Shown in pieces: positions 1 to 21,614 of a stretch of 29,672 bases of DNA. The notes below the pieces were generated by a model. The model saw only the letters and a list, made by a program, of their open reading frames with translations. It did not search any database and was not told the DNA's origin. Location of the stretch: contig CDMY01000694.1 in assembly GCA_001179505.1 (NCBI GenBank), positions 1-29,672 of the forward strand. The letters run 5' to 3'. The translations under genes and the position numbers were made by a program. Numbering within the stretch: position 1 is the stretch's first letter; each line of letters starts with the position of its first letter. The DNA is from Vitrella brassicaformis CCMP3155. Its lineage: Eukaryota; Protista; Chromerida.

Positions 1-2205
1 CACCGATCGTTTGGGTCCCTCCCTCCCGCCCTGTCCGATTGACCGGGGGGGAAATGAGCCGCCAGCCACTTCACTTGTCAATCCAGCCCCTTATCAGCAG
101 GCAACACCACAGCTCCCCCATACACATAAGCGGCCAAACATGTGCCACCAGTCATACGACCGATGGAGCTCCCTGACAATTGTCATACATACGAACAAGG
201 AGACACGAGATATTCTCTTGGCTTCACTGTCGCTCTCGGCTCGCCCGTCTTTGCTCACCTCGTGAGTATTCTTTACGGCCGTCCCGTTTTTCCGCCTCAG
301 ATAGATGGTCCACGCAAACGACGCGACTCGAGATAGAACCGTCACAAGAGTGAAGAAGGCAGGCACAACAAAGAGTATTGGGTTGCTAGCCTCCGTCGCC
401 CACACGATTGTCAGCACCAAGATGGGCACTTCCAGCAGGGCAAATGCCACAATCCAGATGTGTTGGCATAGGGAGGGAGAGCCGCGGATGGAATAGTGAA
501 GAAACAGCGACACAAAGTCGGCCCACGATATGAACATGATGACATAGCCGGCAACTCCATAGCCTTTTGTTACTTCGTTCACGCACCCCCAATCCCACTC
601 GACCCCACAAATGGATCTCCACTGGTCAAGTCCACTCCCGCTGGTCAATTCCACTCCCACCGCCAAATCAGTCATGAAGTCCACGGCCATCCCCACGACG
701 GCCAGCAGTTTGTACAACCGAATGAAAGTGAGATAGTCCATCCGTTTGAGCCACCGCTTGACCACCGAGCGGTAGAGGAAGGGCTCTGTCTGCCGAGCCT
801 TGGCTATGCGCTCGGCCGTCGCCGAAGGTCTCCAGCCTGCCCGACGGCCGCAGCATGAGAGCCGGTTGTGATCGACGTCGATTTCCTTTACACCCGTTGA
901 TGTGGTCGATGCACGGGTAACCCGCGGCTCAGAGATGACAACCAGCAAAGTGAACTGCAGAAGGGCCGCTCCAGCCAGCCACGCCAGTGCGGCTAAGGGG
1001 TCATCGGAGAGGTCGCCGGCAGTCCCGAACTGCTGACGAGCCGATAAATAGATGAGAATGGTGAGGACAATCGAAATATAGACGACGCATCGGATGCCCC
1101 ACCAGAGAGGCGGTGCGCACAGACTTCCCAATCCAATCAAGAGCACCTGAGATGGCGATGCCCAAGTCACAACCATCAATCCGATGTTTCTCCCTCTTCC
1201 ATCAATCTCAAGACGGAATGGGATCTCCTCGCTCAAGTGGAAGAAGTAGAAACAGCCTCCCCACCACCAGAATGCATAGATCACGACGAGGCCGATAATG
1301 AGAAGGAAATGCCTGAGAGCGTAATCCCTCAGCCACAAGGTCACACAGCCAATCCGCAGCACCAGAAAGCCCCACAGGTCACCCTCCTCAGCCGAAGCAT
1401 CCCCGTCGCCAAGCGGAGCCCGGCCGTCCACTGCAGGGGTGGAGACCGATGTCGAGACGGTGGTGGGAATGTCTGAGAGCCGAGCGCCGCCTTCGCCATC
1501 TCCTTCAGCTGGCCTTTTCGTCGTGACGTCCCCTTCAGAAGCTGATTGTCTGAGGACGTCTGTGTCTGGGGGATCAGCCGTGGCAGGAGGAGGGGCGCTG
1601 ACAGACGTGGGCGGCCTCATGCCTGCGTCACTGGCAGAGCTCGATCTGGAGAGCCGCTCGGCTCCCTCTCCTCCGCGATCCGAGCAGGGATTGGGCGTTA
1701 GGGCAGGCGCCGAATAACGCGCACACGACTCAAAAACCACGAAAGAGGCACATCCAGCTCGCCACATCACCCCCCTGCACCACACTCGAACGAGCTGCAC
1801 AAAGATCTGCAGTCAGCGATTCATTTCCCTCTCCCTTTGTGTGCCATCTGTTGAGTGTTCTGCAGGTCAGTCTTCGGCCGGCGTCACTCGACAGGATGAA
1901 TGGACTTCTCTATGCCGTACAGTGGAAGAGGGGTACACCGATGGAAACCCTGCAGTAGTCAGTTGAGTGTGTGTCTGTGTGTGCGCATTTATCTCAGTCA
2001 CTCACTGCAGAAGATCTGCACTCCTCCTGGCCTTGCTGGTCGCCCTCCCCAATGTGTCGCAGGGACACTGCGGCAACCGCAGCGAGAAGCGCCGGCAGAT
2101 CAACGACGAATCCAGGCCTTTATTGGGCATGACGCCTTTGCCACACTGGTGGTTGTTATTGTGTTGTGTCCTGGACTTTCTGGGTGGCTCTGGCTCGTTG
2201 ACGCC
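1..2205 (-). repeat. Segmental duplication unit 1, inverted relative to ~19054-21526; truncated by the window start
   Basis: Its reverse complement aligns by eye with 19054-21526. The match covers the 3' flank (ggattgacaagtgaagtggctggcgg...cccaaacgatcggtg), the ORF, the upstream region (gaaatgaatcgctgactgcagatctttgtgcagctcg) and the divergent module, and ends at ctcgttgacgcc. Confidence 0.9.
94..1800 (-). CDS. Intronless ~8-TM membrane protein, paralog 1 of 3, unknown function
   Basis: Uninterrupted 568-codon ORF with a Ser/Thr/Pro-rich N-tail, 4 hydrophobic helices, a basic loop (KARQTEPFLYRSVVKRWLKR), 4 more helices and an RRK tail. Homologous to 6604-8142 and 19823-21334. Start is uncertain: GTG 1800, ATG 1767, or the family-conserved ATG at 1620 (MRPPTSVSAPP). 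Confidence 0.85.
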   Translation of the reverse strand: MQLVRVWCRGVMWRAGCASFVVFESCARYSAPALTPNPCSDRGGEGAERLSRSSSASDAGMRPPTSVSAPPPATADPPDTDVLRQSASEGDVTTKRPAEGDGEGGARLSDIPTTVSTSVSTPAVDGRAPLGDGDASAEEGDLWGFLVLRIGCVTLWLRDYALRHFLLIIGLVVIYAFWWWGGCFYFFHLSEEIPFRLEIDGRGRNIGLMVVTWASPSQVLLIGLGSLCAPPLWWGIRCVVYISIVLTILIYLSARQQFGTAGDLSDDPLAALAWLAGAALLQFTLLVVISEPRVTRASTTSTGVKEIDVDHNRLSCCGRRAGWRPSATAERIAKARQTEPFLYRSVVKRWLKRMDYLTFIRLYKLLAVVGMAVDFMTDLAVGVELTSGSGLDQWRSICGVEWDWGCVNEVTKGYGVAGYVIMFISWADFVSLFLHYSIRGSPSLCQHIWIVAFALLEVPILVLTIVWATEASNPILFVVPAFFTLVTVLSRVASFAWTIYLRRKNGTAVKNTHEVSKDGRAESDSEAKRISRVSLFVCMTIVRELHRSYDWWHMFGRLCVWGSCGVAC

Positions 2206-2257
2206 ACAGACGCCCACCCACACACAGATTCAGCAAGAAGGCAGTGCGTGGAAGTGA
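2010..2257 (+). other. Conserved module divergent from paralog 1; possible signal-peptide exon of a small secreted protein
   Basis: One frame reads RSALLLALLVALPNVSQG-HCGNRSEKRRQINDE, versus RSALVLALLVALPNVSQG-HCSNRSEKRRQINEE at ~19150-19250 minus. No in-frame ATG or complete exon chain could be assembled, and indels flank the block, so it may be noncoding. Confidence 0.3.
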
Positions 2258-3415
2258 GAGAGAGGGAGCAAGGACCTTCTTCTGTCTCACATCCGTCCAT
2301 CCGTCCCCGCACCAACCAACACACTACACTCACAGAAACAGAGGGCCATCCTTTTTTCCTTCTCGCCTCCATCCATCAGCCCCTTCGTGTGTATTCACTG
2401 ACCAGCTCCACAGCACACACACACACCGTGACGTGTCTGTCTGTCTGTCTGCTTGTGTCATTGTATAAATTAATATTTACGGTGATTTTTCTTTGCCCCC
2501 ATTCCGTGTGTAAGATGGGCTCGGGGGAGGCACTTTTTTACAGGTGTGGTGTGGTGTGGTGTGGTGTGTGTCATTGGTGTCATTAATGTCACTGTGGGTT
2601 TGTCATCCATTGTATGTGACTTTAAGTGAATGGGCCGGGTGGGTGGCATGCGCACGTCCATTCGTGTGCACGGCACGGCACGGCATGGTGTGTGGTGTTG
2701 TGTGGTGTGGCGCGTGTCACTCATACAGTGACCACCCACCGATGCGGTGCGTGCCTGCTTGCCGACCGGCCGATTCACATCACACAGACCTCATCTCTCC
2801 CTCTGCTTCCTTGCCTCCTTCCCGACCGACACTCGTGTGCGGACAACTGCTGTGAATGCATCGATCTGCCTGATGAGGGTTCGCAGTGAAGATCAGTTGG
2901 TGCAGTCGTTGGTTCAACCATTCAAGCAACACTGATACGATCGACCCATGCAGGGAGTCACATATAGACACAGCCGGCCACTCATGAGCCAGCCAAACAA
3001 GCACCACACGCACTCACCCTCTGTCAAACTGACAGAATTCAGCGTTGACGCAGCAATACCTTCGCCCGTACGCACATCCGATGGCATCGATCCCCTACCA
3101 AGGACAAAGACAGCAGCACACTTTTGTGTCCTGGTTTCCGATAGCGACGTCTCGCTTGTTACGGATGATGGCATGTACGGCGTCAAACGTACGACAAAGA
3201 GGACAGACAGGCATCAGACACTAGCAGAGTTCAGTAACACGCCGAAGGGCACCTGATTGAGCTCCCGGGGACGCTGGCCGGTGACAACCAGGCATTGGCC
3301 ACTCCAAAAAAAGCCAGTAAGCGACATCGAGACAAGAGCCGCCACACAAGAAAGAAGGCATGCATGGCCCCAAGCATCGTACGAGAGAGGATAGACAGGC
3401 GAAAGACACCACGCC

Positions 3416-5322
3416 CTAAACCCGGTCGCGTCGAATCAGTGGATGAGCCTCCGTGTTCAGAACCTGGGAAATAATCAGCGAACACGCAGTGAGGCAGCAT
3501 TTGCCGAGCTCCTTTCTCTTCTCACCCATTTGCTGAGGTCGAGCGTCTCTCGCTCAGAGAAGAGCAAATAGAAGTATTTGAGCGTCTCCGCCATGAAAAA
3601 GGACTGGGCAGGCAGGCAGGCAGGCAGGCAGGCAGACAGGCAAGCGACACACACACGCACATACACACATGCAGACAGGTCCCGTCCATCCACTCGTCAC
3701 GGCCACCAGTGCACATGTACGTGCGCATCATGCAGGTAGTGTCTTTCTCACCTCCGTCGCATCTTCTTGCGACTCCGGGTCGTTTGTGTCCTGCAAAAAG
3801 GAGGGACACATCAAGGCGGAGAACGCCTCAGTTTGCGTCCCCGCACCCGCAAGATTGCGTATCCGAATTTTCCACGACACGACGACTGACAGCCATCACA
3901 AACTCAGAGCAATGTTGTTGCCACGACGATCTCTCCCCTCTTTTGTCGCACCCGTATTCCCTTCCACATTGTGGCGCCCCATTCTCTGAAGGAGAAAACA
4001 TGTGTAACACGCCATGTGTCACTCCATGCCTGATGCATACCTGTATTTCGTCTCCCCAGTGAAATACCACATCAAGTACACGCTTTCTATTGCCTCTGGC
4101 CGCAACAGATATCGCCTGTCGCCCCTGTTCGGATCGAACTCCACTGGCGCCGAGGGATCAGCAGAGCGAAAGACAAACCGCTCCCGCCCGACACCGGTAG
4201 CACTTAGGTAGTAGGGAAGGAAGCCTATGCATGGGAGGAAGGGGGCAGGAAACATGAGACATGGTGATGAGGCGTACATCTATTCACGACGAGGCCGTGA
4301 TTTGCTTACAGGCCTGGGTTATTGCCTCGGCCTGCTTCATCCATTGTATCTCTTTGGCCTTGGCCATCTCGAGCTCTCTTTGCCCCAATATAACCTGCAC
4401 ACAGGAGAGAAAGACAGCACACCCAGGGATGGATGGATGGATGGACGGGGGCACACGCATACAGGGTGGGAGACGTGGTGTTTACCATGCCCGGTGCGAA
4501 GCACGCTAAGTGCTCCTACGTTCCCGCGAGAACACAAGGCAGTTGATGACTTCCCCACCTTTGCATCAGCATACCATTTCTAGATTGGAAGGATCGCTGA
4601 AACCGCCTGGAGCAGCCACAACCTAGAAAGCGTGTGAAGGTGACGGCCAAGAAAGAGAAACACACAGACGATCTCTCTCTTGGTCGATCTTACTGTGACG
4701 GCTCCCGAATTGTCCATCTTGACAAGTTGCTCGAACATCTCGTCCATCGCCAGTTCCCAGTCTGTGCTGTACTCCTCCATACCCGTTTGTTTGAAGGTAC
4801 CACTTCAATATGTACTCGTAGTACCTGGATCAGCAGTCCCATCATGACTCCAATGCGTTGGTGTGTCCTCACATACTCAAACTCGCCTTGTCGCCTTACG
4901 AGTCAGCGCCGCCTCCCATGGATGCTTCTCCGCCTGCCCCCTTCGGCTCTTCAACGTTGAGAATATTCATGAATCTGCAGTCAACAAGACAGAGACAGCA
5001 GATGTTTGGTTGCACGGCTGTGCGACAGTGCGCCATTACGGCAATAAATTGTCATTGCCTCCCGCCTTGCGTATCTGCAGATACGCCCGCCTCGCCGCGT
5101 CTTTGAACTTGGGATCGCCCGTCAGGTCCGACAGAGCAAAGAACTCTAGCTGAAAAGTGCCGACCTCCGCAAGGTTGACAATGCAATCCTTTGAGCATGA
5201 GCTGGTGCTCAAGTTGATCTGCCGACAAGGGAAACCGGATGCCGCGTCGATTCCACGGTACAGCCGCTCTCCGATGTCGATGGCCTTGGCCAGAAGGCCC
5301 GGCCTTCCTGACAACGATGCAG

Positions 5323-5357
<35 letters not shown>

Positions 5358-6053
5358 AGAGACAGAGAGTGAGATCTTTATGTATGCATCATCCACACCC
5401 AAAAGTCCCCTCACATGATAATAAGCCACCCAGAATACGGATCGTAATCTCACTGAGCGGACAAGAGCAAGACAGCAAACTTGCAACGCGCACTGACTCG
5501 CACACTCATCCTCTTACAAGAAGGAGAAGGTCATTGCTTTGTCGAAGTCCAAGTTTTTCTCTATGTAACGTGCGGCCTCGCTAAATTCGTCGAGCTCGGA
5601 CATCAGATAAAGAGTGTCGAGTGACTCTACCATCATCAGCATCATGTTCATATAGTTGTTAGGCGTTCCTGAAAGTGGCTCGAGCTCGTCAAAGCCCAGC
5701 GCCAGCTCCTTGTAGTGTGACCAAGTCCAAAGGAACTCGTCGATGATTTCTTGTCGAATCGCTGTGGCGTTGACGGCAGGCAAAGTGATAGATAATGGGA
5801 GAGACCGCATCGGCATCTCGAGAGGCCGCATGGCTTCACTTTCCCGCTCGCTCTGCCGCGCCTGTCGCCACCTTGTGCTATTCACTTCGGCCTCCATCTC
5901 ACAGCTGTGGCGCCGCTGTTCCTGACTCATGACTCCAGGCCCGTCAGGGACAGATTGAAGGAAGGCGGCGGTGAGATTCTCCAAACGTGCGACCTGCTGG
6001 CATGACATCTGGTCGACGGTCACCACCCACAGGAAGAGAAGGAAGCTCAGCAT
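3416..6053 (-). CDS. Glycoside hydrolase family 47 (class I alpha-1,2-mannosidase), multi-exon
   Basis: GH47 motifs rebuilt across GT-AG introns: WSHYKELALGFDELEPLS, VESLDTLYLM, F|EITIRILGGLLS, LAEVGTFQLEF, GGADS|YYEYILK, M|EHLACFAPGM|VILG, RRYLLRPEAIES, SFFMAETLKYFYLLF (exon 3526-3603), VLNTEAHPL (exon 3416-3463, stop 3416-3418). Exon 1 (6053-5518) begins with a hydrophobic leader, MLSFLLFLWVVTV. Catalytic acidic residues and the Ca-binding Thr appear intact. Confidence 0.96.
5326..5351 (+). repeat. (CA)n tract, i.e. (GT)n directly before a splice acceptor of the GH47 gene
   Basis: The minus strand reads gtgtgtgtgtgtgtgtgtgtgtgtgcag|ctgcatcg. Confidence 0.9.
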
Positions 6054-6262
6054 CCTCTTGATGACAGCGGCCTCCTCTTAATGCCAGCGGCCTTCCGAAT
6101 GACGCGTTTGCGGATTGTTTGTTGGCCTTCACTACGCCCCAGATTTACACGCGTACGGTCCCGTGCTTCTGTTCTACCCAGCGCCTGGCCTTGCTGGTCA
6201 GATGAGCATGGAAGCGTCCTCCATATGCACTTGCGGGGAAAAAGCCGCCGTGCATATGCGAA

Positions 6263-8350
6263 ACCCTGCAGCTGTGTGCGCGTTATACGGTGCCTGCCCA
6301 AACGCCAATCCCCGCTCGGATCGCGGAGGAGAGAGAGGAAGAAAGGCAGCAGAGAAAACTCACAAACGCACACAGGATGGCGACCAACACGCAGCCAGAA
6401 GGGCTCTCACTGCATCAGCTGACTTTTCTCTCTCTCTGTTCTCTCCGTCCGTCTGGCTATGTGTCTGTCTGTCTGTGAAGCCGCCGTGATTTGGCTGCCG
6501 AGCTCACTTACTACACAGCAGATCTGCAACAACGGCCTTCAAGCATCACGTTTATTCGCACGGCTCTCGATCTCCAAGATCGGCTCTCCGAGTGGAGGCA
6601 GATATGAGGCCGCCCACGTCTGTCAGCGCCCCTCCTCCTTCCACGGCTGATCCCCCAGACACAGACGTCCTCAGACAGTCAGCTTCTGAAATGGACGTCT
6701 TGACGACAAGGCCAGCGGAGTCACCGGAGCATCAATCGGAGGCTCAAGGAGATGGCGAAGGCGGCGCTCGGCTCTCAGACATTCCCACCACCGTCTCGAC
6801 ATCGGTCTCCACCCCTGCAGTGGACGGCCGGGCTCCGCTTGGCGACGGGGATGCTTCGGCTGAGGAGGGCGATCTGTGGGGCTTTCTGGTGCTGCGGATT
6901 GGCTGTGTGACCTTGTGGCTGACGGACTACCCTCTGAGGCATTTCCTTCTCATCATCGGCCTCGTCGTGCTCTATGCACTCTGGTGGTGGGGGGGCCTTC
7001 TCTACGTACTTCTCGTTATCCTTGGCTCGGCAAACAGAGCCCTTCCTGTACCGCTCGGCGGTCAAGCGGTGTTACTCACCATCGTGGCGATCAATCTGGC
7101 GACTTTTGCACCGCCGTCTGTGATGCTCCTCGTTGGATTGGGAAGTCTGTTTGCACCGCCTCTTTGGTGGGGCACTCGATGGCTCATGTACTTCTCTATC
7201 GTTCTGACAATCGTCGCATCCGGAAGCCTGTTAGCTGGGGCTTATGTGTCCCTTGCCGAAGGCAATCCCTTCGACAAGAACGGCCACAGCGATCCCTTCG
7301 GCCTGCGCTTTGGCACACTGGCATGGGCGGCTGGTGCGGTGCTTCTGCAGTTCACCCTCTTCGTTGTCTTGTCGGAGCCACGCATTGCCCGTGCATTGAC
7401 CAGCCCGACGGGCGGAAGGGAAAGCGATGGCGATCACAACCGGCTCTCGTGCTGCGGCCGTCGGGCAAGGTGGAGACCCTCGGCGACGGCCGAGTGGATA
7501 GCCAAGGCTCGGCAGACAGAGCCCTTCCTCTACCGCTCGGTGACCAAGCGGTGGCTCAAACGGATGGACTATCTCACTTTCATTCGGTTGTATAAACTGC
7601 TGGCCGTCGTGGGGATGGCCGTGGATTTCATTACCGATGCTGCAGTGGGGTTGGAAATGATCTTCCAGGGGCTGGAAGAATTGAACTGGTCGGGGGACCC
7701 GGAAGCGCAAGGCCTAGAAGGAGAAGCACAAGGCTATCTAGTTGTCGGTGGCGTCATCCTGGGCCTATCGCTGGCTGATTTCATATCGCTGTTTGTCCAT
7801 TATGGTATCCGCAGCTCTCCCTCGCTATGCCAACACATCTGGATTGCGGCCCTTGCCCTGCTGGAAGTGCCCATCTTGGTGCTGACGATCGTCTGGGCGA
7901 TGGAGGCCAGCAACCCGATACTCTTCATCGTGTCTGCCTTCTTCACTCTGGTGACGGTTCTCTCTCGAGTCGGGCCGTTCGCGTGGAGCGTATATGTGCG
8001 GCGAAAAGTCGGGACGGCCGCAAAGAATACTCACGAGGTGAGCAATGAAGAGCGAGCCTTCAACGAGAGTGAAGCCAAGAAAGTATCTCGTGTCTTCTTG
8101 TTCGTATGTCTGACAAATGTCAGGGAGAGCCATCTGTCGTAACGGATGGCACATCTTTGGCCGCTGATGTATGGCGGAAGTGTGGTAGTTTCGCCCGGTG
8201 GGTGGATTGGATTGACAAATAGCTAGCTGGCCCGGTCAATCGGACAGGGACGGAGGGCCCAAACGATCGGTGGATGGACGGATGTATGTGTCTGCAGATG
8301 CATGTCCGTCAGTCAGATGCTTGTTTGCATTTTGCAGCGAAAGGTGTGTG
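6263..8350 (+). repeat. Duplication unit 2 (direct relative to unit 3, inverted relative to unit 1)
   Basis: Homology to the other copies starts at gtgtgcgcgttatacggtgcctgccc (~6263). It runs through the ORF and 3' flank (ccggtcaatcggacaggg...cccaaacgatcggtg) to gtttgcattttgcagcgaaaggtgtgt (~8348), which matches ~21590-21614. Confidence 0.85.
6604..8142 (+). CDS. Intronless ~8-TM membrane protein, paralog 2 of 3
   Basis: Uninterrupted ORF (track start GTG 6592; conserved ATG 6604, MRPPTSVSAPP) with the same architecture as paralog 1. Head-to-head with the GH47 gene, ~550 bp between starts. Confidence 0.88.
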   Translation: MRPPTSVSAPPPSTADPPDTDVLRQSASEMDVLTTRPAESPEHQSEAQGDGEGGARLSDIPTTVSTSVSTPAVDGRAPLGDGDASAEEGDLWGFLVLRIGCVTLWLTDYPLRHFLLIIGLVVLYALWWWGGLLYVLLVILGSANRALPVPLGGQAVLLTIVAINLATFAPPSVMLLVGLGSLFAPPLWWGTRWLMYFSIVLTIVASGSLLAGAYVSLAEGNPFDKNGHSDPFGLRFGTLAWAAGAVLLQFTLFVVLSEPRIARALTSPTGGRESDGDHNRLSCCGRRARWRPSATAEWIAKARQTEPFLYRSVTKRWLKRMDYLTFIRLYKLLAVVGMAVDFITDAAVGLEMIFQGLEELNWSGDPEAQGLEGEAQGYLVVGGVILGLSLADFISLFVHYGIRSSPSLCQHIWIAALALLEVPILVLTIVWAMEASNPILFIVSAFFTLVTVLSRVGPFAWSVYVRRKVGTAAKNTHEVSNEERAFNESEAKKVSRVFLFVCLTNVRESHLS

Positions 8351-12137: not shown

Positions 12138-12473
12138 TGCCTGACGAATCGAACAATCAAACGATCGAAGGGATGAGTCAATGAGTGATGGTCTGACACG
12201 CGGTCTGACACGCGGTAGTGTCTGCCTGTTGCACCTTGACTTACCTCGCCATGAGGCAAAGCAGACGAAGATGAAGCAACTGACACGGCGCCACTCAGAC
12301 GCCGCTGACACGTGGGACAGTGCAAGGGGACAGATGCATCACTCTCGTTGACCATTGACACCCTCGTGTTTTGCTTCTTGCCAGTGAGGTCTGCTTGACT
12401 TTTCTCACTGTAAGAAGGCGTATTCTCTATTGCGAATGGCCAGCGGCCTCCACAGGACACTCACGCTCACTCA

Positions 12474-14170
12474 GTGGGGGGAAAAAGTCTTCTCAGTAGC
12501 GATGGTCTCTCAGATCTGCGAGCTTGGTTTTGGTTCATCCGCTGCCGGCATCTGCCCGATGCATCAGTCATGGAGCAGACGCACCTGCAGCAGCAGCACC
12601 CCTTTTCATTCATCTTTGTCGGGCGCCGCACTTTCTACCTGCTCAGCCTCACGGACATCCTGTGTCTGAGAGGCACGTCCACATCGCTCAGAGATCTCTT
12701 CGGGGCGACCCAACTGCGACATCGGCTCCGCCACTCGCTCGGCTCACAGGCGGGGCTGCGGCGGGCGGTGAATGGACCGCAAGTGCAGCTGCTGCGGTTC
12801 GACGATGACCAGTTCGGTGTTCATGATCTGCTGGCGGCTGTGTGTGTGATGGAGGAGGGGGGCTTGGTGGAGATCGGAGGGGTCATCGAGCTGGGGGCGC
12901 ATTGCGGTTACTGTAACCTGCCTGTCATCCTCACATCCGATGACATCAACAAACACGCCAACAAGACCGTAAGGCACACACCGACTCACAAGGAGTGGGA
13001 GATACCAGAGTTGCCTCATTGATGTGTCTGTGATGTATGTTGTCGTGTGTGTAGGCGTATGTGTCGATTTCCCGTGTGTTGGCGCAGCTCATGGTGGTGG
13101 GGCGCCACATCGACTTCGGTGACGGCAGCCGGCTGCAGCTGTTCCTCCACGGCCATGAGGTGCGGGCCATCAGTGACGAGCCCGACTTCGAGCTGGACTT
13201 TAACCCGCCCCTCCCTGCCGGCCACCAATACCGGCAGCACCGACGACGGGACGACCCGCCAGTGGGCAACAGCATCTACTACAACGAGTTCGACGGCACA
13301 TGGAGGAGTGGGGTGGGCGGCGACTTCACCTATGCGTCGACGTCGTCGTGCGCCGAGCGTTGGATCCTCAACCACTTCGAGGGGACTCACCAGACCAATC
13401 GCACATCGATAAACCTCAACAGGTAAAACATCAATGTCACCAGTGGGTGAGAGGGGTGCGTGTTTGATTGTGGGTGTGTGTGTGGTTGGTTCAGGTATGT
13501 TGGCGGCGGCCGTCTTGATGCCCTCCTCACCCAGTCGCCCCACACACCGGTGGTCGGATGCAGCACCACATTCAGCCGGAATGGTCGTGAGCGATACCTG
13601 GTGCTCACCAATAGCACCCACAACTTCGTCGCATGGATTTACATCTGAGAGTTGGGAAACAACAGAGGTCAGGCCGACAGACAGACAGACAGACAGACAG
13701 ACAGAAAGACTGACAGGCAGCTCTGGTGGTCACGTGCCGCAAATGTTCTCTCCCTTTTGTGTCTGCAGTGGACGTTCATGTGTGGACGACCGAGTCTCCT
13801 GTGTCTGGTGTGGGTGGTGTCTTCAAGCACAGCTTCCGCCAGACGACCGCCCTGGCTCGTGTGGCGCTTGGGGCTGTGGGACCTTACGTGTTCGACGGAC
13901 AACAGCCGCCGCAACAGCCACAGCAGCAGGGGGGCGACGATAGTGATGATGGTACGGACAAACAGAGGGAGGGAGGGAGGGAGGGAGGGCGGAAGGGAGG
14001 GACACACACGAGAATGGATGGATGGATGGATGTGCCTTCTTTGTCTATGTGGTGTAGATGAGGACGGCCATGGCGGTGGTTGGGACGATATGAATGGCGA
14101 CGACAGCGGAGGTACACAGGAAGGAAGAAACGAAGGAAGGCGCACACAGCGCAGCACCGATGCCCTGTAA
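12474..14170 (+). CDS. Lineage-specific family protein, tandem paralog A; in-frame TGA in exon 3 (truncated or pseudogene)
   Basis: Exons ?-12968, 13055-13422, 13495-13667, 13769-13951, 14058-14170, with GT-AG boundaries matching paralog B (LPVILTSDDINKHANKT|AYVSISRVLAQLMVVGRHIDFGDG). TGA at 13646-13648. The start codon is uncertain. Confidence 0.75.
13676..13705 (+). repeat. (ACAG)n microsatellite in intron 3 of paralog A
   Basis: gacagacagacagacagacagacagacaga. Similar tracts at ~16356-16378, ~17600-17620 and, as (GTCT)n, ~14654-14679. Confidence 0.9.
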
Positions 14171-15242
14171 GGTGTATGTTCCTCTGTTTGACAGGTGAGG
14201 ATGCATCAGCCGAGGACTGGAACCAACCCACACCGGGGCAGGGCAGCATAGACTAGACAGGTAAGGTACACACACCACAGACAGAAAGATATCTATCTGC
14301 ACGTCTTCTGTGCTCCAGCTGATTGGGTCTTGCCCTCCTCTGCTCTGTGCGTGGCATGATGGTTGTCTTACAGGAGTGAGGATGACTGGAGTGCTGGGTT
14401 CGTCGTCTCTTTAGCTGGCTGCCCGGTCGTCGGCTCGTGGACATCCGCAACTCACTCTGTGGCTAGGTGCCTGAGGGGCTGGGTGAGTGAGTGGTTGGGT
14501 GCGTTGGAAATCACCCAGGCATTCTTGTCGAGAGACCGGCTGACATGACACCTTCATCCAATGGCTGTGTCGTGTTGCCTTGCCGACCTCTTTGCGCTGT
14601 GCAATTCCTCCCCTCCCTCTCCCTCCGTGTCGATACTTATTGCCTGCCTCCCTCTGTCTGTCTGTCTGTCTGTCTGTCTGCCCCTCTGTGTGTGTTCGTA
14701 TGTGTATGTCCTCTGTACACACCAATACATACGGATGTACACACACACACACACTCATATGTATATATGTCCATCGCGGATGGATTCCTGCGTCCATGGC
14801 CTCTTTGTCGGACTGTGTTGCCTGTTCATGGCTTCCTCTCTGCTGACGATGGCTGGATTTCCTCTCTAGCTCTCTCTCTGTGAATGAGTGGCTGGATCGG
14901 CAATGATTTGACTGTTTCGCTTGATGCAATGGAATCGATCGCCGTGTGGTACTCACTGACTGAGTCACTGACTGACCGGCTTGATGGTTGGCTGTAATAG
15001 GATGTTTGTGTGCAGAGGACAGACTTTGCACTGACCGTAACCGTCGCCGCCTCAGCACCCAAAGACCCAAGCACACTCTCTCAGATGAAGCAAACGCAAT
15101 CGCCAATGACCAACCGTCACACTCTCTTATGCCGACTGCATCTGCGCCTCACATACAGTTCATCGGAATCTGTTCGATCACTGCGAGCTTTGACGAGCGA
15201 GATTGGGCGTAGAAAGTAGCTCCTTGCGAATGAGTGAGGGCG

Positions 15243-16890
15243 ATGGGCAACACCGTCCCGCGGAAGACCAGCGACGAGGCCTCGCCGTCCATCCACGGCC
15301 AGTGCCTCGACTTCATTCGCCGGGACGACAGATACCAGCTCTACGACGAGGCCAAGGACATCGGCCGCCTCAGAACCGCAGCCCGCTTCGTCGGCAATGA
15401 CCACTTCCCTGCCCAGACGCTCCGCGAGCGACTCAAATGGTCACTGCATCGCACTCGGCTCGCCGATGGGAGCCGGCTGGACACCGTGATAGCCTTCGAC
15501 CCGCAGTCGGTGACCGAGGCGCGGCTGCTGCTGGCGGCCATGTGGATGGTGGAGAAGCAGAGGTGGGAGGAGGTGGCTGAGGTGCTGCGGTGGGCCAGCC
15601 AGTGTGGATGTTGCACCCTGCCCGTCAACGTCACCGCTGACGATATCAACAAACACGCCGACAAGACGGTGGGACTCACAGGGCGGGCGGGCGGGAGGGA
15701 GGGCGGGCAAGAAAGGGCCTGATTTACCCATTCATGTGTGTGTGGTGTCGTGTGTGTAGGCGTATGTGTCGATTCCCCGTGTGTTGGCGCAGCTCATGGT
15801 GGTGGGGCGTCACATTGACTTCGGTGACGGCAGCCGGCTGCAGCTGTTCCGCCATGGCCACGAGGTGCGGGCCATCAAAGACCAGCCCGGCTTCCGGCTC
15901 CCCCTCAACCCGCCCCTCCCGCCCGGCGACCCGCACCACCGACTACACGATGACCCGCCGGTGCACAGCCGCATCTACTACGACGGCTGCAGATGGAGGA
16001 CTGGGGTGCTCGTCACCTATGCGTCGGTGTCGTCGTCGGCTAAGGACATGATCCTCAAGCATTTCGTTGAGACTCACCAGACCAATGACACTCCCTCAAT
16101 AGGTAACCCACCGATGGCACCAGTGGGTGAGAGGGGTGCGTGTCTGATTGTGTGTGTGCGTGTGGTGTGGTTGGTTCAGGCATGTTGGCGGCGGCCGTGT
16201 GGATGCCCTCCTCACCCAGTCGCCCCACACACCAGTGGCTGGATGCAGCACCACATTCTGCCAGGACGGTGATCGATACCTGGTGCTCACCAACAGCACC
16301 CACACCTTCGTCGCATGGATTGTCATCATTAACCACTGGGGGACCAACAACGGTCAGACAGACAGACAGACAGACAGGCAGCTTTGCTGGTCACGTGCCA
16401 CCAATGTTCTCTCCCTTTGTGTCTGCAGTGGGCGTGGTTGTGTGGACGACCGAGGCGCCAGTGTCTGCTGTGGGTGGTGCCCTCAAGGACCGCTTCCCCG
16501 AGACGACCGCCCTGGCTCGTGTGGCGCTGGGGGCTGTGGGGCCTTACGTGTTCGACGGACAGCCGCCGCCGCCGCCGCAACAGCCACAGCAGCCACAGCC
16601 ACAGCCACAGCAGCAGGGGGGCGACGATGGTACGACGGGTACGAGACAAAGAGACAGAGGGAGGGAGGGAGGGAGGGAGGGAGGGACACACACACGTGTG
16701 GATGGATGGTGTAGATGGAGACGTTGGTGATGGCGATGCTGATGACGGTGATATGCATCCCAACGACGGACAAGAGGCCAGCAGAGGTACGCATCACAGC
16801 ACAGACCCCCTGGCTCCTGTCGATCTGCATCACTCGTCTAGCTGTGTGTGTGTGTGTCAGGTAGCGACGAGTACTCGGAGTGAGTCATGA
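15243..16890 (+). pseudogene. Lineage-specific family protein, tandem paralog B; apparent frameshift at the end of exon 2
   Basis: Exons 15243-15668 and 15760-16102, then exons starting at 16180, ~16429 and 16715, all homologous to paralog A. Exon 2 ends 7 nt short relative to A, giving a phase-1 donor where exon 3 needs phase 2. The 3' end is approximate. Confidence 0.65.
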
Positions 16891-17236
16891 GGCGGACACG
16901 GCTATGGAGGCAAGAGGGGCTGTCGAGGCCGTCGAGTGCCCACAGACATACAGACAGTGTGATGATACGTGGATCGGTGCGTGGGGGTGCAGAAAAGATG
17001 GTCTCCATGGCTGGCTGCCGGGGGCTATGGTGTGTGAGAGTGTGGCCGTCTGTGTAGAAGAATTGAGCAGCCCACCAGCTGAGCCGCTGCATGGGGGTCT
17101 GTCTACTCACTGGTATTGTTTGTTTTGGCAGTGAGAGTGTGAGGCGCCACACAGACCCATAAGTCTGACGGGGGAGGGAGCAAACCAGGGAGACAGGCAG
17201 CACGGTTCCTCACCTTGTCGTCCAACACACACAGAG

Positions 17237-17240
<4 letters not shown>

Positions 17241-17267
<27 letters not shown>
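17241..17267 (+). repeat. (CT)n microsatellite, intergenic
   Basis: Direct read: ctctctctctctctctctctctctctc. Confidence 0.9.
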
Positions 17268-18478
17268 ATCCGTTGACTCTTTGTGCACAGCACAGCACGT
17301 GTGAGGGCTTTGGTGGATGGATCTTTGTGTTTGGGTCGGGCCCACTGTGCGCCCATCGACCGGTTGCAACGCTAATCCATCTTTGCATGATGGGTGTGTT
17401 GGTATCCCGGCCACACACAGATGACAGAGGAGCGCACCGCCAACCGATGTAGGACCACTTGCTGACAGACAGAGAGAGAGGGAGGGAGTGGTGTTAGCAA
17501 GACCATCCATCCATCCATCTGTGGCGCATTGTTTGCTCCATTCCATACACATATACATCGCCGTGTGTGTTTCACACTCGTGGCCCATCCACTCACCCAC
17601 AGACAGACAGACAGACAGACCGCGGCCATGCAGTCAGTCATTGTTGCCTTACTGTCGGTCGGGGCGGCTTCCTCTCTCTCTCTGTGTTTCGCTTTGAGTT
17701 CATATCTGTGTGACCCTCTGCACGGCACTCGGTACGGTCGCCGAGGCGCTTTTGCCGAGGGCTTTCATGTGCACAGCCACAGACACTGACTGGAGTGATG
17801 CGCTCCACTTCTCCTTATTGCTCGTGGTGCGGGGATGGATGGCCATGTGCTCACGACAGGTCGGTCTCTGCTGCCTTGACTGCCTCAGTTTGACTCTCTC
17901 CCCCTCCGTGCGTATACGTACAATACACCGTACATACATATGATATGTACATCACACTGATGCATTATGTATGTGTATATATATACCTCGCTGGCTGGGT
18001 GGCTGGCTTGCATGCTGCCTGGCCATGGTGTGTTGCCCTCCTCTGTCTGCTGGCCGGTTTTGACCTGATGCCTCGGCCGACCGCTGTGGGTGTTTGTGTG
18101 AGTGCCTGCCTGCATGCATGCATGCAGTACGTGCTTTTTTCGACTGATTGCTCGTGTGGATGACTTTTGGAGTGAGAGCACGCCACTCAATCTGTGTCTA
18201 GCTGTCCATTGAGGCATTATGCGGAGGGGGTGCATCGTGCCGACCGACCGACACTCACCACCCCTGAGATGATAGATATGTTGGTGTTCGTCACACCACA
18301 CCATGCCACACCACACCAAAGTCATTCGCTCGTCCCTCACCAACCAGCATTCTGCCAATCGTCCATCGATTTGCAAACGCTCGCCACGTGTTCTGTCACA
18401 TACACACCATCGCGTCTACTTGCACCCCCACCACATGCCGCAGAGCATCTCGGGCAATCAATGTCGCTGATGCAGCTT

Positions 18479-18954
18479 TCATCGACAGACGAGGCCTGTG
18501 TTTCCGCACTTTGCAGCTATCCATCCCGGCTTGTCGTGGTGGGTCTTCAGCTCCTCGATTGACACATCGCCACACCAGTTGACACGTCGGTCGGGGCAGT
18601 TGACCTCCTGCGAGATGCTGGTGCAGACGGCGTGCTGGTCGTTGGAGTAGCGGTGCCTGGCAGACACGCATTCGGTAAGACGGACGTGATCGAGGTCGCA
18701 AAGCGGCTTTGGTTGGCTGGTTGGTTCTCGCGTCCGTGAACCTGGAGGCATTATAGAAGCGAAACAGCACACGCACACAGCCATGAATGAGGATGCTCAC
18801 GCAACGATGGGCCGTCCGCTCACTTACTTGATGCCGATATAACATCAATGTGTGTTGGGCAAGTCGGTTCTCGCCGTGCGGCTACGTCACCACTTTGAAG
18901 ACAAACGTTATCTTGAGCTGCTGGTCGCCAAGCACGACGAAGTCGTGCCACACA
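18479..18954 (-). CDS. Candidate small cysteine-rich protein, last two exons only; 5' exons unresolved
   Basis: Intron 18827-18742 has a GTAAGT donor and an ...atgcctccAG acceptor. It joins exon 18954-18828 (CVARLRRAWRPAAQDNVCLQSGDVAARREPTCPTHIDVISAS) in matching phase 1 to exon 18741-18479 (SSRTREPTSQPKPLCDLDHVRLTEC...AAKCGNTGLVCR*, 7 Cys). The upstream in-frame TAG at 18955-18957 could serve as the acceptor. Confidence 0.45.
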
Positions 18955-19053
18955 CTAGAGCCTCGCCGAGCTAGAGGTCGACCACACACTCGAGCATGCC
19001 ATCGGACAAGCTTTCGAACGATTGGTTCTCTGACCTGCTGTTTCACCCACGCA

Positions 19054-21614
19054 GGCGTCAACGAGCCCGAGCCACCCAGAGAGTCCAGGACAATAACACC
19101 CACGAGTGTGGCGTAGTCGCCATGACCAACAAAGGCCTGTATTCTTCGTTGATCTGCCGGCGCTTCTCGCTGCGGTTGCTGCAGTGTCCTTGTGACACAT
19201 TGGGGAGGGCGACCAGCAAGGCCAGGACGAGTGCAGATCTTTCTCCAGCGAGCGCCTGAGATAAATGCGCACACACACAGCCACACACTCAATTTGAGTA
19301 CTGCAGGGTTTCCATCCATCAGTGTACCACACGGCGGTGAAGAGAGCGGAGTAGCCCTCTTCCCCTGTTCACTGCACAGCGCAGAGAAGTCCATTCACCC
19401 TGTAGAGTGACGCGGCAGTACACTGACCTGCAGAACACCCAACAGATGGCACACAAAGGGACAGAGAAATGAATCGCTGACTGCAGATCTTTGTGCAGCT
19501 CGCTAGTGTGTGGTGCAGGGGGGTGATGGCGAGGTGGATCTGTCTGTTTTTCGTGGTTTTTGAGTCGTGTGCGCGTTATACGGTGCCTGCCCTAACGCCG
19601 AAAGCCCGCTGGATCGCGAGGAGAGAGAGCGCCCGCAGAGAGAGTCACAAACGCACACAGGATGGCGACCAACACGCAGCCAGAAGGGCTCTCACTGCCT
19701 CTCAGCTGACATTTCTCTCTCTCTTTTCTGTAAAGCCGCTGTGATTTGGCTGCCGAGCTCACTACACAGCGGATCTGCAACACGGCCTTCGAACATCGCG
19801 TCTATTCGCACGGCTCACAGGCATGAGGCCGCCCACGTCTGTCAGCGCCCCTCCTCCTTCCGCCACGGCTGATCCCTCAGACACAGACGTCCTCAGACAG
19901 TCAGCTTCTGAAATGGACGTCTTGACGACAAGGCCAGCGGAGTCACCGGAGCATCAATCGGAGGCTCAAGGAGATGGCGAAGGCGGCGCTCGGCTCTCAG
20001 ACATTCCCACCACCGTCTCGACATCGGTCTCCACCCCTGCAGTGGACGGCCGGGCTCCGCTTGGCGACGGGGATGCTTCGGCTGAGGAGGGTGACTTGTG
20101 GGGCTTTCTGGTGCTGCGGGTTGGCTGTGTGACCTTGTGGCTGACGGACTACCCTCTGAGGCATTTCCTTCTCATCATCGGCCTCGTCCTGATCTATGCA
20201 CTCTGGTGGTCGGGCGGTATTATCTACGGACATCTCGGCAACCTGGAGCTCCCGGTGGATATTCGGCTGCTCTTTCCCGACCCGCTCCCGGCGATTGTGA
20301 TGTTTCCACTGCCGTCTCTGATGATCCTCGTTGGATTGGGAAGTCTGTTTGCACCGCCTCTCTGGTGGGGCACTCGATGGCTGATGTACTTCTCTATTGT
20401 TCTCGCCATTGTCATATCCTGGATCATCTTAGTGTCGGTTTACACCTACGCCATTCCTCATGATCCCATTCGTTTGCGGTTCCCAACACTGGCGTGGGTG
20501 GCTGGTGCGATTCTTCTGCAGTTCACTTTGCTGATATATATCTCGGAGCCGCGTATTATCCGTGCATCGACCAGCCCGACGGGTGGGAAGGGAAATCGAC
20601 GTCGATCACAACCGGCTCTCGTGCTGCGGCCGTCGGGCAAGGTGGAGACCCTCGGCAACGGCCGAGCGCATAGCCAAGGGTCGGCAGACAGAGCCCTTCC
20701 TCTACCGCTCGGTGGTCAAGCGATGGCTCAAACGGATGGATTATCTCACTTTCATTCGGTTGTGTAAACTGCTGGCCGTCGTGGGAATGGCCGTGGATTT
20801 CATTACCGATGCAGCAGTGGGGATGGAATTGAGGAGCTGGGTTCCGAGAAGTGTATGGCGTGCATATGCTATGTGTGGGTCCCCCGAATATCCGCTGTGG
20901 AGTGACGCTGAAGAGGAGTGCTTTGATACCACGATGAGCCGTCTTCGAAGAGAAGAGCAAGGCTATCAAGTCGTTGGCTTGATCATCCTGGGCCTATCGC
21001 TGGCTGACTTCGTGTCGCTGTTCGTTTACTTTTCCATCCGCGGCTCTCCCTCGCTATGCCAGCACATCTGGATTATCGCCTTTGCCCTGCTGGAAGTGCC
21101 CATTCTGGTGCTGACGATCGTCTGGGCGACGGCGGCCAGCAACCCGATGCTCTTCGCTGTGTCTGCACTTTTGTCACGGTTTCATGGCGAGTCGGGTCGT
21201 TCGCGTGGACCATCTATGTTCGGCGGAAAAACGGGACGTCCGCGAGCAATACAAACCACAAGGTGATGAGAAGAAGGGCGAGCGAGTGGGAAACGAGTGA
21301 AGCCAACAACAGACGGCATCTTGTGTGTGTTTGATGTCAGGGAGGGCCATTGGTCGTATGACGGATGGCACGCTGTTGGGCACTTATATATGTGTGCAGT
21401 GCACCGGGGGGAGTTGTGGTATTCCCTGCCGGTGATCGGATTGGATTGACAAGTGAAGTGGCTGGCGGTTCATTTCCCCCCCGGTCAATCGGACAGGGCG
21501 GGAGGGAGCGACCCAAACGATCGGTGGATTCCACCGCCAGCCGCAGGACCGACTTGTGCCCGGGTCCATGCATGGCAGTCACATGTTCGTTTGCGTTTTG
21601 CAGCAAAGGTGTGT
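19054..21614 (+). repeat. Duplication unit 3
   Basis: Inverted match to 1-2205 and direct match to 6263-8350. Confidence 0.88.
19823..21334 (+). pseudogene. Intronless ~8-TM membrane protein, paralog 3 of 3, two frameshifts
   Basis: Homology is split over ORFs 19823.., 20562.. and 21056... There is a +1 G at ~20585-20587 (acgggtgggaagggaaatc vs acgggtgtaaaggaaatc in copy 1) and a 7-nt deletion at ~21168 (gtgtctgc[cttcttc]act in copy 2). The start frame hits a stop at 20765-20767. Confidence 0.8.

What the first reader, a model, noticed from the sequence alone, without database searches (positions are those of the whole stretch)
94..21334. Three-member intronless 8-TM family whose three predicted outward-facing loops are hypervariable cassettes
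Seen: copies 1, 2 and 3 share near-identical TM cores and cytosolic loop, but three segments are unalignable and differ in length by whole codons. Loop 1: CFYFFHLSEEIPFRLEIDGRGRNIGLMVVTWAS / LLYVLLVILGSANRALPVPLGGQAVLLTIVAINLATFAP / IIYGHLGNLELPVDIRLLFPDPLPAIVMFPL. Loop 2: ARQQFGTAGDLSDDPLAA / SLLAGAYVSLAEGNPFDKNGHSDPFGLRFGT / WIILVSVYTYAIPHDPIRLRFPT. Loop 3, after AVDFxTDxAVG: TSGSGLDQWRSICGVEWDWGCVNEVTK / IFQGLEELNWSGDPEAQGLEGEAQ / RSWVPRSVWRAYAMCGSPEYPLWSDAEEECFDTTMSRLRREEQ; copies 1 and 3 each have a Cys pair here. In copy 2 the loops lie at ~6997-7110, ~7207-7310 and ~7650-7728. Inference: with no signal peptide and basic residues in the big loop and tail (positive-inside rule), all three variable loops fall on the extracellular/luminal face. 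That pattern fits a diversifying recognition receptor (self/non-self, mating, host or pathogen sensing).
Basis: partly seen in the sequence, partly recalled or inferred. Interest (0 to 1): 0.75.

Follow-up and report, generated by a model that had tools for sequence, protein, structure and literature searches.

The report
Algal membrane-protein family with variable outer loops
The alga Vitrella brassicaformis carries about twenty copies, many of them broken, of a gene for an eight-pass membrane protein of unknown function; copy-to-copy recombination keeps the core alike, while three outward-facing loops have drifted apart at roughly the neutral rate, so a diversifying "recognition receptor" is not needed to explain the pattern.

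Summary
The window is a whole contig of Vitrella brassicaformis CCMP3155. It holds three paralogs whose DNA alternates between near-identical blocks and three blocks that are at chance-level identity.

- The family has about 20 loci genome-wide, not three. Six have intact reading frames.
- It is not intronless. A conserved 3' intron of about 86 nt precedes a micro-exon encoding G-x-P-S/L-V-V-stop.
- Copy 3 is a transcribed pseudogene with two frameshifts.
- Copy 2 has lost the micro-exon's stop codon.

AlphaFold2, hydropathy and the positive-inside rule agree on an N-in, C-in topology with 8 transmembrane (TM) helices. All three variable segments are the tips of helical hairpins on the non-cytosolic face, so the topology inference holds.

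Diversifying selection is not supported:
- In the variable segments dN/dS is 0.69 (CI 0.51-0.93) and dS is 0.69.
- In the conserved blocks dN/dS is 0.42 and dS is 0.34.
- The variable segments are about as diverged as the upstream non-coding DNA.
- Recombination between paralogs is significant (PHI, 0 of 1000 permutations).

Best reading: concerted evolution of the core, with weakly constrained, indel-prone loops that escape homogenisation.

The family has no Pfam, PDB or fold match and is found only in chromerids. This scan had already noted the gene-conversion signature on this window (s1-239573).

The parts
259..1620 (-). Copy 1, main exon (ATG at 1620, splice donor after 259). The ORF is intact. 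The annotated model CEM30269.1 (P0004) covers part of it.
173..258 (-). Copy 1, 3' intron (GTGAGC...GTCAG).
   Evidence: P0004 ends ...THE|GAPSVV
152..172 (-). Copy 1, terminal micro-exon encoding GAPSVV and the stop.
1156..1254 (-). Copy 1, variable segment V1 (tip of the TM1-TM2 hairpin).
988..1053 (-). Copy 1, variable segment V2 (tip of the TM3-TM4 hairpin).
556..654 (-). Copy 1, variable segment V3 (tip of the TM5-TM6 hairpin; shortened Cys-pair form).
6604..8037 (+). Copy 2, main exon. The ORF is intact, but no annotated protein for it turned up in the databases searched.
8038..8123 (+). Copy 2, 3' intron.
8124..8222 (+). Copy 2, terminal exon. A 2-nt deletion removed the stop after GEPSVV, which adds 26 residues.
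6997..7101 (+). Copy 2, V1.
7024..7071 (+). A 48-nt patch inside copy 2's V1. It is copied out of register from the cytosolic-loop coding region of a paralog and is read in another frame. Identity is 90% to copy 2's own 7506-7553 and 94% to copy 1's 752-799.
   Evidence: E 4e-15 to 2e-10
7219..7314 (+). Copy 2, V2.
7651..7740 (+). Copy 2, V3 (short form; the Cys-pair core is deleted; one NWS sequon).
19823..21262 (+). Copy 3, main exon. It is a pseudogene: an extra G within 20578-20598 and a 7-nt deletion at 21165/21166. It is transcribed, because transcript-derived P0032 starts at the first frameshift, and it is annotated only as the fragment P0010.
21263..21340 (+). Copy 3, 3' intron.
21341..21361 (+). 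Copy 3, micro-exon (GGPLVV and the stop).
20219..20299 (+). Copy 3, V1.
20417..20485 (+). Copy 3, V2.
20823..20969 (+). Copy 3, V3 (long Cys-pair form).
1621..2162 (-). Upstream flank of copy 1, shared with copy 3 (19090-19822) at about 90% identity in patches. The duplicated unit is the gene plus at most 0.9 kb upstream and at most 0.5 kb downstream.
   Evidence: (I7, I9, I16)

Best explanation
**What it is.** These are three members of a clustered multigene family of about 20 loci, found only in chromerids. Within the window one member is intact, one has an altered C-terminus and one is a pseudogene. No function is known. The predicted protein has:
- a disordered acidic N-terminus of about 85 residues;
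- a beta-hairpin that is predicted to sit with strands from the large basic TM4-TM5 loop on the cytosolic side;
- eight TM helices arranged as two four-helix halves;
- invariant acidic residues inside TM5 (D-x-x-x-D) and TM6 (D), and a near-invariant one in TM7 (E-V-P);
- a C-terminal P-S/L-V-V tail carried on its own micro-exon.

**Why three segments look hypervariable.**
- Shown: non-allelic gene conversion between paralogs repeatedly homogenises the conserved coding blocks and, in part, the flanks. Conversion tracts end at the heterologous segments.
- Shown for the rates, inferred for the cause: the three non-cytosolic hairpin tips are only weakly constrained. They keep the reading frame, a hydrophobic helix-end character and, in V3, a Cys pair. 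They therefore keep the family's true, older divergence and collect in-frame indels, an internal duplication and at least one out-of-register templated patch.

The contrast is therefore mainly a homogenised core against near-neutral loops. It is not loops driven apart by selection.

**Inferred function.** The conserved membrane-embedded acidic residues suggest that the core has a transport- or channel-like job (or a scramblase-like one) that does not depend on loop sequence.
For: **Family size and decay**
- 56 protein matches and 42 DNA pieces in the genome resolve to about 20 loci.
- Six of 12 near-full-length copies are intact. The others have stops or frameshifts, and there are also fragments.

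**Mosaic ancestry**
- L006 against L007: intron 0.96 and downstream 0.98, but upstream 0.56 and V segments 0.37-0.51.
- Copy 2 against copy 3: N-terminal block 0.98, but V segments 0.43-0.52.
- PHI recombination test on 248 informative sites of the conserved blocks: observed 0.566, permuted 0.594 +/- 0.006, 0 of 1000 permutations as low.

**Rates**
- Conserved blocks: dN 0.14, dS 0.34, dN/dS 0.42 (CI 0.35-0.50).
- N-terminal block and C1: dS only 0.15-0.18.
- Variable segments within alignable types: dN 0.48, dS 0.69, dN/dS 0.69 (CI 0.51-0.93).
- Identity in the V segments does not differ from that of the upstream non-coding DNA: median differences +0.04, 0.00 and -0.06, not significant.

**The V segments are coding**
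- Their lengths are multiples of three wherever the extraction boundaries hold, and the six intact ORFs read through them.
- They are retained in the annotated models and in transcript-derived proteins.

**Indel mechanisms seen directly**
- The 48-nt out-of-frame patch in copy 2's V1.
- An internal duplication in the V3 of L006, and deletion forms of V3.

**Topology**.

**Invariant acidic TM residues across paralogs of 23-75% identity**.
Against: - Pairs such as L006 and L011 are 84-94% identical in every conserved block, in the intron and in both flanks, yet sit at chance in all three V segments. Under this model that needs many separate conversion events that all stop at the V borders.
- No two of the 12 copies share a V segment. 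The best cross-copy identity is 0.71-0.76. This could also mean that copies with identical loops are selected against.
- dN/dS averaged over short, saturated, recombining segments can hide a few positively selected sites. The upper confidence limit is 0.93.
- Pairwise comparisons are not independent, so the Wilcoxon p-values are inflated.
- The transport-like function is inference only. No fold or family match supports it.
Confidence: 0.55

Rival explanations
1. The three exposed loops are kept different by diversifying or frequency-dependent selection because the proteins are recognition receptors or variant surface molecules (self/non-self, mating, or interaction with a coral host or microbes). 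The core is conserved for membrane insertion and signalling.
For: - All three variable segments lie on the non-cytosolic face, while every cytosolic loop is conserved.
- Each of the 12 copies has a private set of V1-V3.
- Pairs with flanks 84-98% identical still have V segments at chance.
- The long V3 form is a small helical module with a conserved Cys pair, predicted at pLDDT 70-86.
- The pattern parallels the hypervariable loop of the Plasmodium 2TM families (PMC1751529).
Against: - dN/dS in the V segments is 0.69, with a confidence interval below 1. Their dS is raised as well, so they look old rather than fast.
- Their divergence equals that of the upstream non-coding DNA.
- Much of V1 and V2 is hydrophobic helix end rather than exposed loop.
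- Half of the full-length copies are pseudogenes.
- There is no evidence on localisation, a ligand or regulated expression.
Confidence: 0.25
2. A dedicated mutational mechanism generates the loop diversity. Segmental, partly out-of-register gene conversion or template switching would write short patches into the loops, with the many broken copies and fragments acting as donors, as in the donor-cassette systems of some pathogens.
For: - One clear templated patch exists: 48 nt in copy 2's V1, copied from the cytosolic-loop region of a paralog and read in another frame.
- The V3 of L006 contains an internal duplication.
- There are many fragments and pseudogenes.
- Recombination is active in the family.
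Against: - A systematic search of all 36 V segments against all family loci found only that one patch. Every other V segment matches only itself.
- A whole-genome DNA search with copy 2 found no V-only silent cassettes.
- One event does not make a mechanism.
Confidence: 0.1
3. The variable segments are not protein at all (retained introns or an annotation artefact), or the repeated unit is a mobile element or viral gene rather than a cellular family.
For: - The conserved borders of V3 happen to read GT...AG.
- In the distant paralogs L035 and L036 an intron seems to sit at the V3 position.
- The copies lie on small, repeat-rich contigs.
Against: - V-segment lengths are multiples of three and the six intact ORFs read through them.
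- The segments are kept in spliced transcripts in which the real 3' intron has been removed.
- The repeated unit is gene-sized, with no transposase or terminal repeats seen.
- The neighbours are ordinary genes: a GH47 mannosidase and a family-B DNA polymerase.
Confidence: 0.03

Closest known systems
Plasmodium falciparum 2TM superfamilies (Pfmc-2TM, STEVOR, RIFIN): a hypervariable loop between two TM helices (Lavazec et al. 2006, PMC1751529)
   Same: - Multicopy membrane-protein genes in amplified loci with very high nucleotide identity.
- Sequence diversity is confined to sharply bounded segments between TM helices on the presumed exposed face.
- The organism is an alveolate related to Apicomplexa.
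   Different: - There is no sequence or fold relationship (Pfam finds nothing).
- This family has eight TM helices and three variable sites, not two TM helices and one loop.
- There is no signal peptide or export motif.
- The alga is free-living or coral-associated, with no antibody pressure.
- No telomere repeat is present on this contig.
- dN/dS in the variable parts is below 1 here.
XK-related (XKR) lipid scramblases (PF09815; structures 8xej, 9boj, 7p16)
   Same: - These are the only solved structures whose alignment spans the whole TM domain of the model: 237-246 residues over model residues 105-461.
- They are N-in, C-in multi-helix proteins with charged residues inside the membrane (this last point is from my own knowledge of XKR8).
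   Different: - Z is only 7.3-7.8 with rmsd 5.2 Å, below the tool's stated noise level for helical bundles.
- No family member matches PF09815, and the genome-wide best is E 0.96 at an unrelated locus.
- The model has 8 helices, whereas XKR proteins have 8 TM helices plus 2 re-entrant helices.
CECR6/TMEM121 family (PF14997)
   Same: - The top three named hits of the language-model search are all this family, at scores 0.75-0.76.
- Vitrella's own TMEM121-like gene shows motifs of similar appearance: D-x-x-D-x-A-V-G and D/E-I/V-P (by eye).
   Different: - The scores lie in the range that shuffled sequences reach.
- hmmscan finds no PF14997 hit in any member.
- Profile comparison of the superfamily alignment with the two TMEM121-like exons gives a probability below 1%.
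- That family's function is itself unknown.
Concerted evolution of multigene families with heterologous regions that escape conversion (a general phenomenon; my own knowledge)
   Same: - Star-like, uniformly high identity in the conserved blocks.
- Mosaic nearest neighbours along the gene and a significant recombination signal.
- Divergent segments that bound the conversion tracts.
   Different: This is a process, not a protein family. It explains the pattern but says nothing about what the protein does.

Membership tests
Plasmodium 2TM superfamily (RIFIN / STEVOR / Pfmc-2TM) | Sequence membership (Pfam RIFIN/STEVOR models), two TM helices, and an N-terminal signal plus export motif. | tested here: not met
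   No Pfam hit at E up to 0.1-1. Eight TM helices. The N-terminus is acidic and disordered, with no hydrophobic signal.
Plasmodium 2TM superfamily (RIFIN / STEVOR / Pfmc-2TM) | Hypervariability confined to loops between TM helices, inside otherwise near-identical amplified loci. | tested here: met
   This is a resemblance in pattern only.
XK-related scramblases (PF09815) | A match to the family HMM. | tested here: not met
   No hit in the family. The genome-wide best is 12.7 bits, E 0.96, at an unrelated locus.
XK-related scramblases (PF09815) | A shared fold. | tested here: inconclusive
   VIA-align Z 7.3-7.8, about 240 residues aligned, rmsd 5.2 Å. This is below the tool's noise level for helical proteins. 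Foldseek found nothing.
CECR6/TMEM121 (PF14997) | A match to the family HMM, or profile similarity to a bona fide member. | tested here: not met
   hmmscan finds none. hhalign against the Vitrella PF14997-positive exons gives a probability of 0.1-0.4%. The only positive is the ESM Atlas lead at 0.75-0.76.
G-protein-coupled receptors (7TM) | The seven-helix fold. | tested here: not met
   These are the top Foldseek rows, but with E of 0.1 or more, TM-score of 0.25 or less and rmsd above 16 Å. The model has eight helices in two four-helix halves.
   AlphaFold2 helix order, positive-inside counts and the Cys pair in V3. Whether the membrane is the cell surface was not testable.
   dN/dS 0.69 (CI 0.51-0.93). 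dS is doubled as well. Divergence equals that of the upstream non-coding DNA. Site-level tests were not possible.

The most novel reading that the evidence does not exclude
A free-living or coral-associated relative of the malaria parasites already has a variant, surface-exposed multigene family. In this reading the 8-TM proteins present a crown of three hairpin tips, private to each copy, to the outside. Selection against identical loops keeps them different, and gene conversion, with pseudogene copies as occasional donors, reshuffles the remainder. This would be a forerunner in principle, not by descent, of apicomplexan variant-antigen families, used for gamete, kin or host recognition.
Probability: 0.15. 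Interest if true: 0.75.

Novelty: new variant of a known kind. Interest (0 to 1): 0.4.

Why it matters
If the loops were shown to be selected for diversity, this would be a variant surface family in a non-parasitic chromerid. That would bear on how the apicomplexan habit of keeping large families of variant membrane proteins arose.

As the evidence stands, it is a clean example of a known effect. Concerted evolution makes ordinary, weakly constrained loops look hypervariable, because the rest of the gene is kept artificially young.

It also defines a chromerid-restricted orphan family. The family has eight TM helices, invariant acidic residues inside the membrane and a conserved C-terminal valine-valine micro-exon. 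Its members are annotated only as 'unnamed protein product', 'Transmembrane protein' or 'Uncharacterized protein', and several gene models are truncated.

Tried and rejected
**Family and fold searches that found nothing**
- Pfam scans of the window copies and of ten distant paralogs.
- PDB sequence search with the superfamily profile: nothing at E below 0.79.
- Foldseek against the PDB: nothing at E below 0.1.
- VIA-align wide search: only generic four-helix-bundle matches and sub-noise XKR matches.

**Searches for relatives outside Vitrella**
- An exhaustive HMMER search of 1.84 billion representatives gave 22 hits. All hits whose source was looked up are Vitrella, apart from one weak Chromera hit (Cvel_15310, E 2e-7) and unnamed MMETSP transcripts.
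- A word-indexed search with the wider superfamily profile found Vitrella proteins only.

**Specific hypotheses tested and dropped**
- CECR6/TMEM121 and XKR membership.
- Silent donor cassettes: a whole-genome DNA search with copy 2 gave no V-only hits. A local search of all V segments gave only the single patch.
- A subtelomeric location: no telomere repeat in the window. The genome list of telomere-bearing contigs was truncated, so the other family contigs remain open.
- V segments as introns: rejected on frame, open reading frames and transcripts.

**Not possible or not done**
I therefore could not establish whether the JGI-derived proteins P0002, P0003, P0029 and P0032 are transcript contigs. 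Their spliced C-termini suggest that they are. P0002 and P0032 switch paralog in conserved blocks and P0029 carries another copy's C-terminus, most likely through chimeric short-read assembly.
- The earlier-findings index had nothing by sequence or by words.
The copy 2 and copy 1 queries were read-through translations given by reference, so the copy 2 model carries 34 intron-encoded residues at its C-terminus.
- DeepTMHMM and Phobius were not available. Hydropathy, AlphaFold2 and charge counts were used instead.

Full report
**Where this is.** The window is the whole of contig C694 of a 72.7-Mb, 1064-contig genome. Its predicted proteins are named in public databases as Vitrella brassicaformis CCMP3155, a photosynthetic relative of apicomplexan parasites.

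**Checking the observation**
- The three ORFs and the quoted peptides are present.
- A DNA alignment of the three copies shows the pattern described: stretches of up to 100% identity, for example the roughly 200 nt that encode the end of the N-terminal region and the first hydrophobic segments. These are interrupted by three blocks that do not align and that differ in length.
- The variable segments (V1, V2, V3) lie at:
  - copy 1 (minus strand): 1254-1156, 1053-988 and 654-556;
  - copy 2: 6997-7101, 7219-7314 and 7651-7740;
  - copy 3: 20219-20299, 20417-20485 and 20823-20969.

- The family is not three genes. Six-frame and DNA searches of the genome find about 20 loci of the close family. 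These lie on C694 (3), C592 (4), C439 (2), C481 (3), C318, C1047, C459, C676, C593, C740, C394 and C559. There are also distant paralogs at 24-35% identity with the same overall architecture.
- Of 12 near-full-length copies, six have intact frames: copies 1 and 2, L002, L005, L006 and L007. The others carry a stop or frameshifts, and further loci are fragments.
- Copy 3 is one of the broken ones. It has an extra G within 20578-20598 and a 7-nt deletion at 21165/21166. A transcript-derived protein (P0032) begins exactly at the first frameshift, so the break is real and the pseudogene is transcribed.
- The gene is not intronless. A GT..AG intron of about 86 nt, followed by a micro-exon encoding G-x-P-S/L-V-V-stop, is conserved in 10-11 of 12 copies. 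It is used in the annotated model of copy 1 (P0004) and in the models or transcripts P0002, P0028 and P0032.
- Copy 2 has lost the micro-exon's stop through a 2-nt deletion and would carry 26 extra residues.

**Structure and topology**
- Two AlphaFold2 models were built on a 16-17-sequence alignment. They have mean pLDDT 70-71.5 and pTM 0.64-0.68.
- Both agree on the following order:
  - a disordered N-terminus of about 85 residues;
  - a beta-hairpin at the segment that hydropathy alone might take for a first TM helix;
  - four long helices;
  - a partly beta-stranded basic loop of about 65 residues;
  - four more long helices.
- Whether the hairpin pairs with the loop strands is my inference, because model coordinates could not be inspected.
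- Lys+Arg counts are 19-22 in the loops on the N/C side and 2-9 on the other side.
- V1, V2 and V3 are the TM1-2, TM3-4 and TM5-6 connections. They therefore share one face, opposite the basic loops, whatever the N-terminal hairpin does.
- About half of V1 and V2 is the outer end of the flanking helices and stays hydrophobic in every copy.
- V3 in its long form is a module of about 45 residues, predicted as short helices at pLDDT 70-86. It carries a conserved pattern, W..A.SICG...PW.D.DEEC..TT.SRL..EAQ, that includes the Cys pair. This form is present in 8 of 12 copies. The short V3 of copy 2, L002 and L005 are deletions of it, and L006 has it partly duplicated.
- In the distant paralogs this loop is only a few residues long.
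'Unalignable cassettes' is too strong for V3.

**How the variable segments evolve**
- Across 12 copies, median pairwise DNA identity is:
  - 0.75-0.91 in the conserved blocks;
  - 0.52 / 0.51 / 0.46 in V1 / V2 / V3, against 0.49 / 0.46 / 0.41 for shuffled controls;
  - 0.62 in the 3' intron, 0.66 downstream and 0.52 upstream.
- The V segments are more diverged than the intron and the downstream flank. They are not more diverged than the upstream non-coding DNA. The pairs are not independent, so the p-values there are only indicative.
- V-segment lengths are multiples of three wherever the extraction boundaries hold, and the six intact ORFs stay open through all three segments. They are coding sequence.
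- Every copy has its own private V1-V3. The best cross-copy identity is 0.71-0.76.
- Nei-Gojobori estimates pooled over pairs:
  - conserved blocks: dN 0.14, dS 0.34, dN/dS 0.42 (bootstrap CI 0.35-0.50);
  - N-terminal and first conserved blocks: dS only 0.15-0.18;
  - V segments, within the types that can be aligned: dN 0.48, dS 0.69, dN/dS 0.69 (CI 0.51-0.93).
- So both kinds of change are raised in the V segments, and non-synonymous change does not exceed synonymous change.

**Recombination between paralogs**
- Nearest neighbours change along the gene. Copy 2 is closest to copy 3 in the N-terminal block (0.98), to L006 in the second conserved block (0.93) and to L002 in the intron (0.91). 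L006 and L007 are 0.96-0.98 identical in the intron and downstream, but 0.56 upstream.
- A PHI test on the gap-free conserved columns gives 0 of 1000 permutations as low as the observed value.
- The duplicated unit is only the gene plus at most 0.9 kb upstream and at most 0.5 kb downstream.
- One out-of-register event is directly visible. Copy 2's V1 contains 48 nt (7024-7071) copied from the region that encodes ...QTEPFLYRSV... in the cytosolic loop. It is 90-94% identical to that region in several copies and is read in a different frame.
- No other templated patch was found, and no V-only donor cassettes.

**Interpretation.** The simplest account of these numbers has two parts. Gene conversion keeps the conserved blocks, and partly the flanks, younger-looking than the family really is. 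The three non-cytosolic hairpin tips are heterologous, so conversion tracts stop at them. They are only weakly constrained, so they display the family's true, near-neutral divergence plus in-frame indels. I give this 0.55.

- pairs such as L006 and L011 are 84-94% identical everywhere except in the three V segments;
- no two copies share a V segment.

A dedicated patch-writing mechanism rests on a single event (0.1).

**What the protein is.** No function can be assigned.
- Pfam, the PDB sequence search and Foldseek give nothing.
- The structural aligner gives generic four-helix-bundle hits. Only XK-related scramblases align across the whole TM domain, and at Z 7.3-7.8, which the tool itself rates as noise for helical proteins.
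- A language-model search points weakly (0.75-0.76) to CECR6/TMEM121. HMM and profile tests against Vitrella's own PF14997-positive gene fail.
- The exhaustive search of 1.84 billion representatives found 22 proteins. All hits whose source was looked up are Vitrella, apart from one weak Chromera hit and unnamed MMETSP transcripts. A wider profile found nothing more.
- Across paralogs of 23-75% identity, the invariant columns are two Asp in TM5, a Gly and an Asp in TM6. A Glu in TM7 is near-invariant. From general knowledge, conserved acidic residues inside the membrane point to ion, solute or lipid-headgroup handling rather than a passive scaffold. This is inference only.
- The terminal S/L-V-V on its own micro-exon resembles C-terminal valine export signals and, in the PSVV form, class I PDZ-binding motifs. 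This comes from my own knowledge and was not tested.

**Closest known analogue.** The pattern most resembles the hypervariable loop of the Plasmodium 2TM families. There, amplified loci of 'profound nucleotide identity' highlight divergence confined to a loop (PMC1751529). There is no homology, and the selective setting is different.

**Limits**
P0002 and P0032 switch paralog in conserved blocks, and P0029 carries another copy's C-terminus. This is most likely short-read assembly chimerism.
Queries were read-through translations given by reference.
- Site-level selection tests, strain comparisons, localisation and expression could not be done here.

**Verdict.** The feature is real and clearly defined, and it belongs to a new chromerid-restricted family. 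The striking contrast is best explained by concerted evolution of the core together with weakly constrained loops, not by the proposed receptor diversification. Interest is moderate.

Noticed in passing
window 12900-14033 and 15600-16717: A tandem duplicate about 2.7 kb apart, with patches at 74-91% identity (repeat families D4-D12). It appears to be two copies of a multi-exon gene with no Pfam match. Each copy ends in an (AGGG)n / (GGAT)n simple repeat.
   Followed up: partly
window 5514-6053 (-): An exon of a glycosyl hydrolase family 47 (alpha-mannosidase / EDEM-type) gene between copies 1 and 2 (Pfam E 3e-17).
   Followed up: partly
window 26125-26928 and 27886-28467 (+): Exons of a family-B DNA polymerase (exonuclease domain E 4e-6, polymerase domain E 4e-15). 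It looks like an ordinary multi-exon cellular gene. No mobile-element features were looked for.
   Followed up: partly
window 23951-25804 (+): A 617-aa open frame in the most GC-rich part of the window (65-66%) with no Pfam match. It may be a real gene or merely a GC-driven open frame.
   Followed up: no
window 152-172 (-), 8124-8141 (+), 21341-21361 (+), and the other family loci: The last six codons (G-x-P-S/L-V-V) sit on their own micro-exon in nearly all copies. This conserved C-terminal valine-valine could be a trafficking or PDZ-type signal. Copy 2 and L007 have lost it, by loss of the stop codon and of the splice acceptor respectively.
   Followed up: partly
L004 (G000:C592:108009-112340): This copy has a stop near its N-terminus. 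Its 5' end is joined in frame to about 250 codons of unrelated sequence, so it is possibly a chimeric or rearranged locus.
   Followed up: no
L037 (G000:C723:17357-20509): Vitrella has one gene that matches CECR6/TMEM121 (PF14997, 26.9 bits). By eye it shows D-x-x-D-x-A-V-G and D-I-P motifs that resemble the conserved TM5 and TM7 motifs of the family studied here. Profile comparison does not support a relationship.
   Followed up: yes
proteins P0002, P0029, P0032 (JGI-derived): These proteins are mosaics of different genomic paralogs: P0002 and P0032 switch copy inside conserved blocks, and P0029 is L005 with the C-terminus seen in P0005. The cause is either short-read transcript assembly chimeras or real recombinants in another isolate.
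   Followed up: partly
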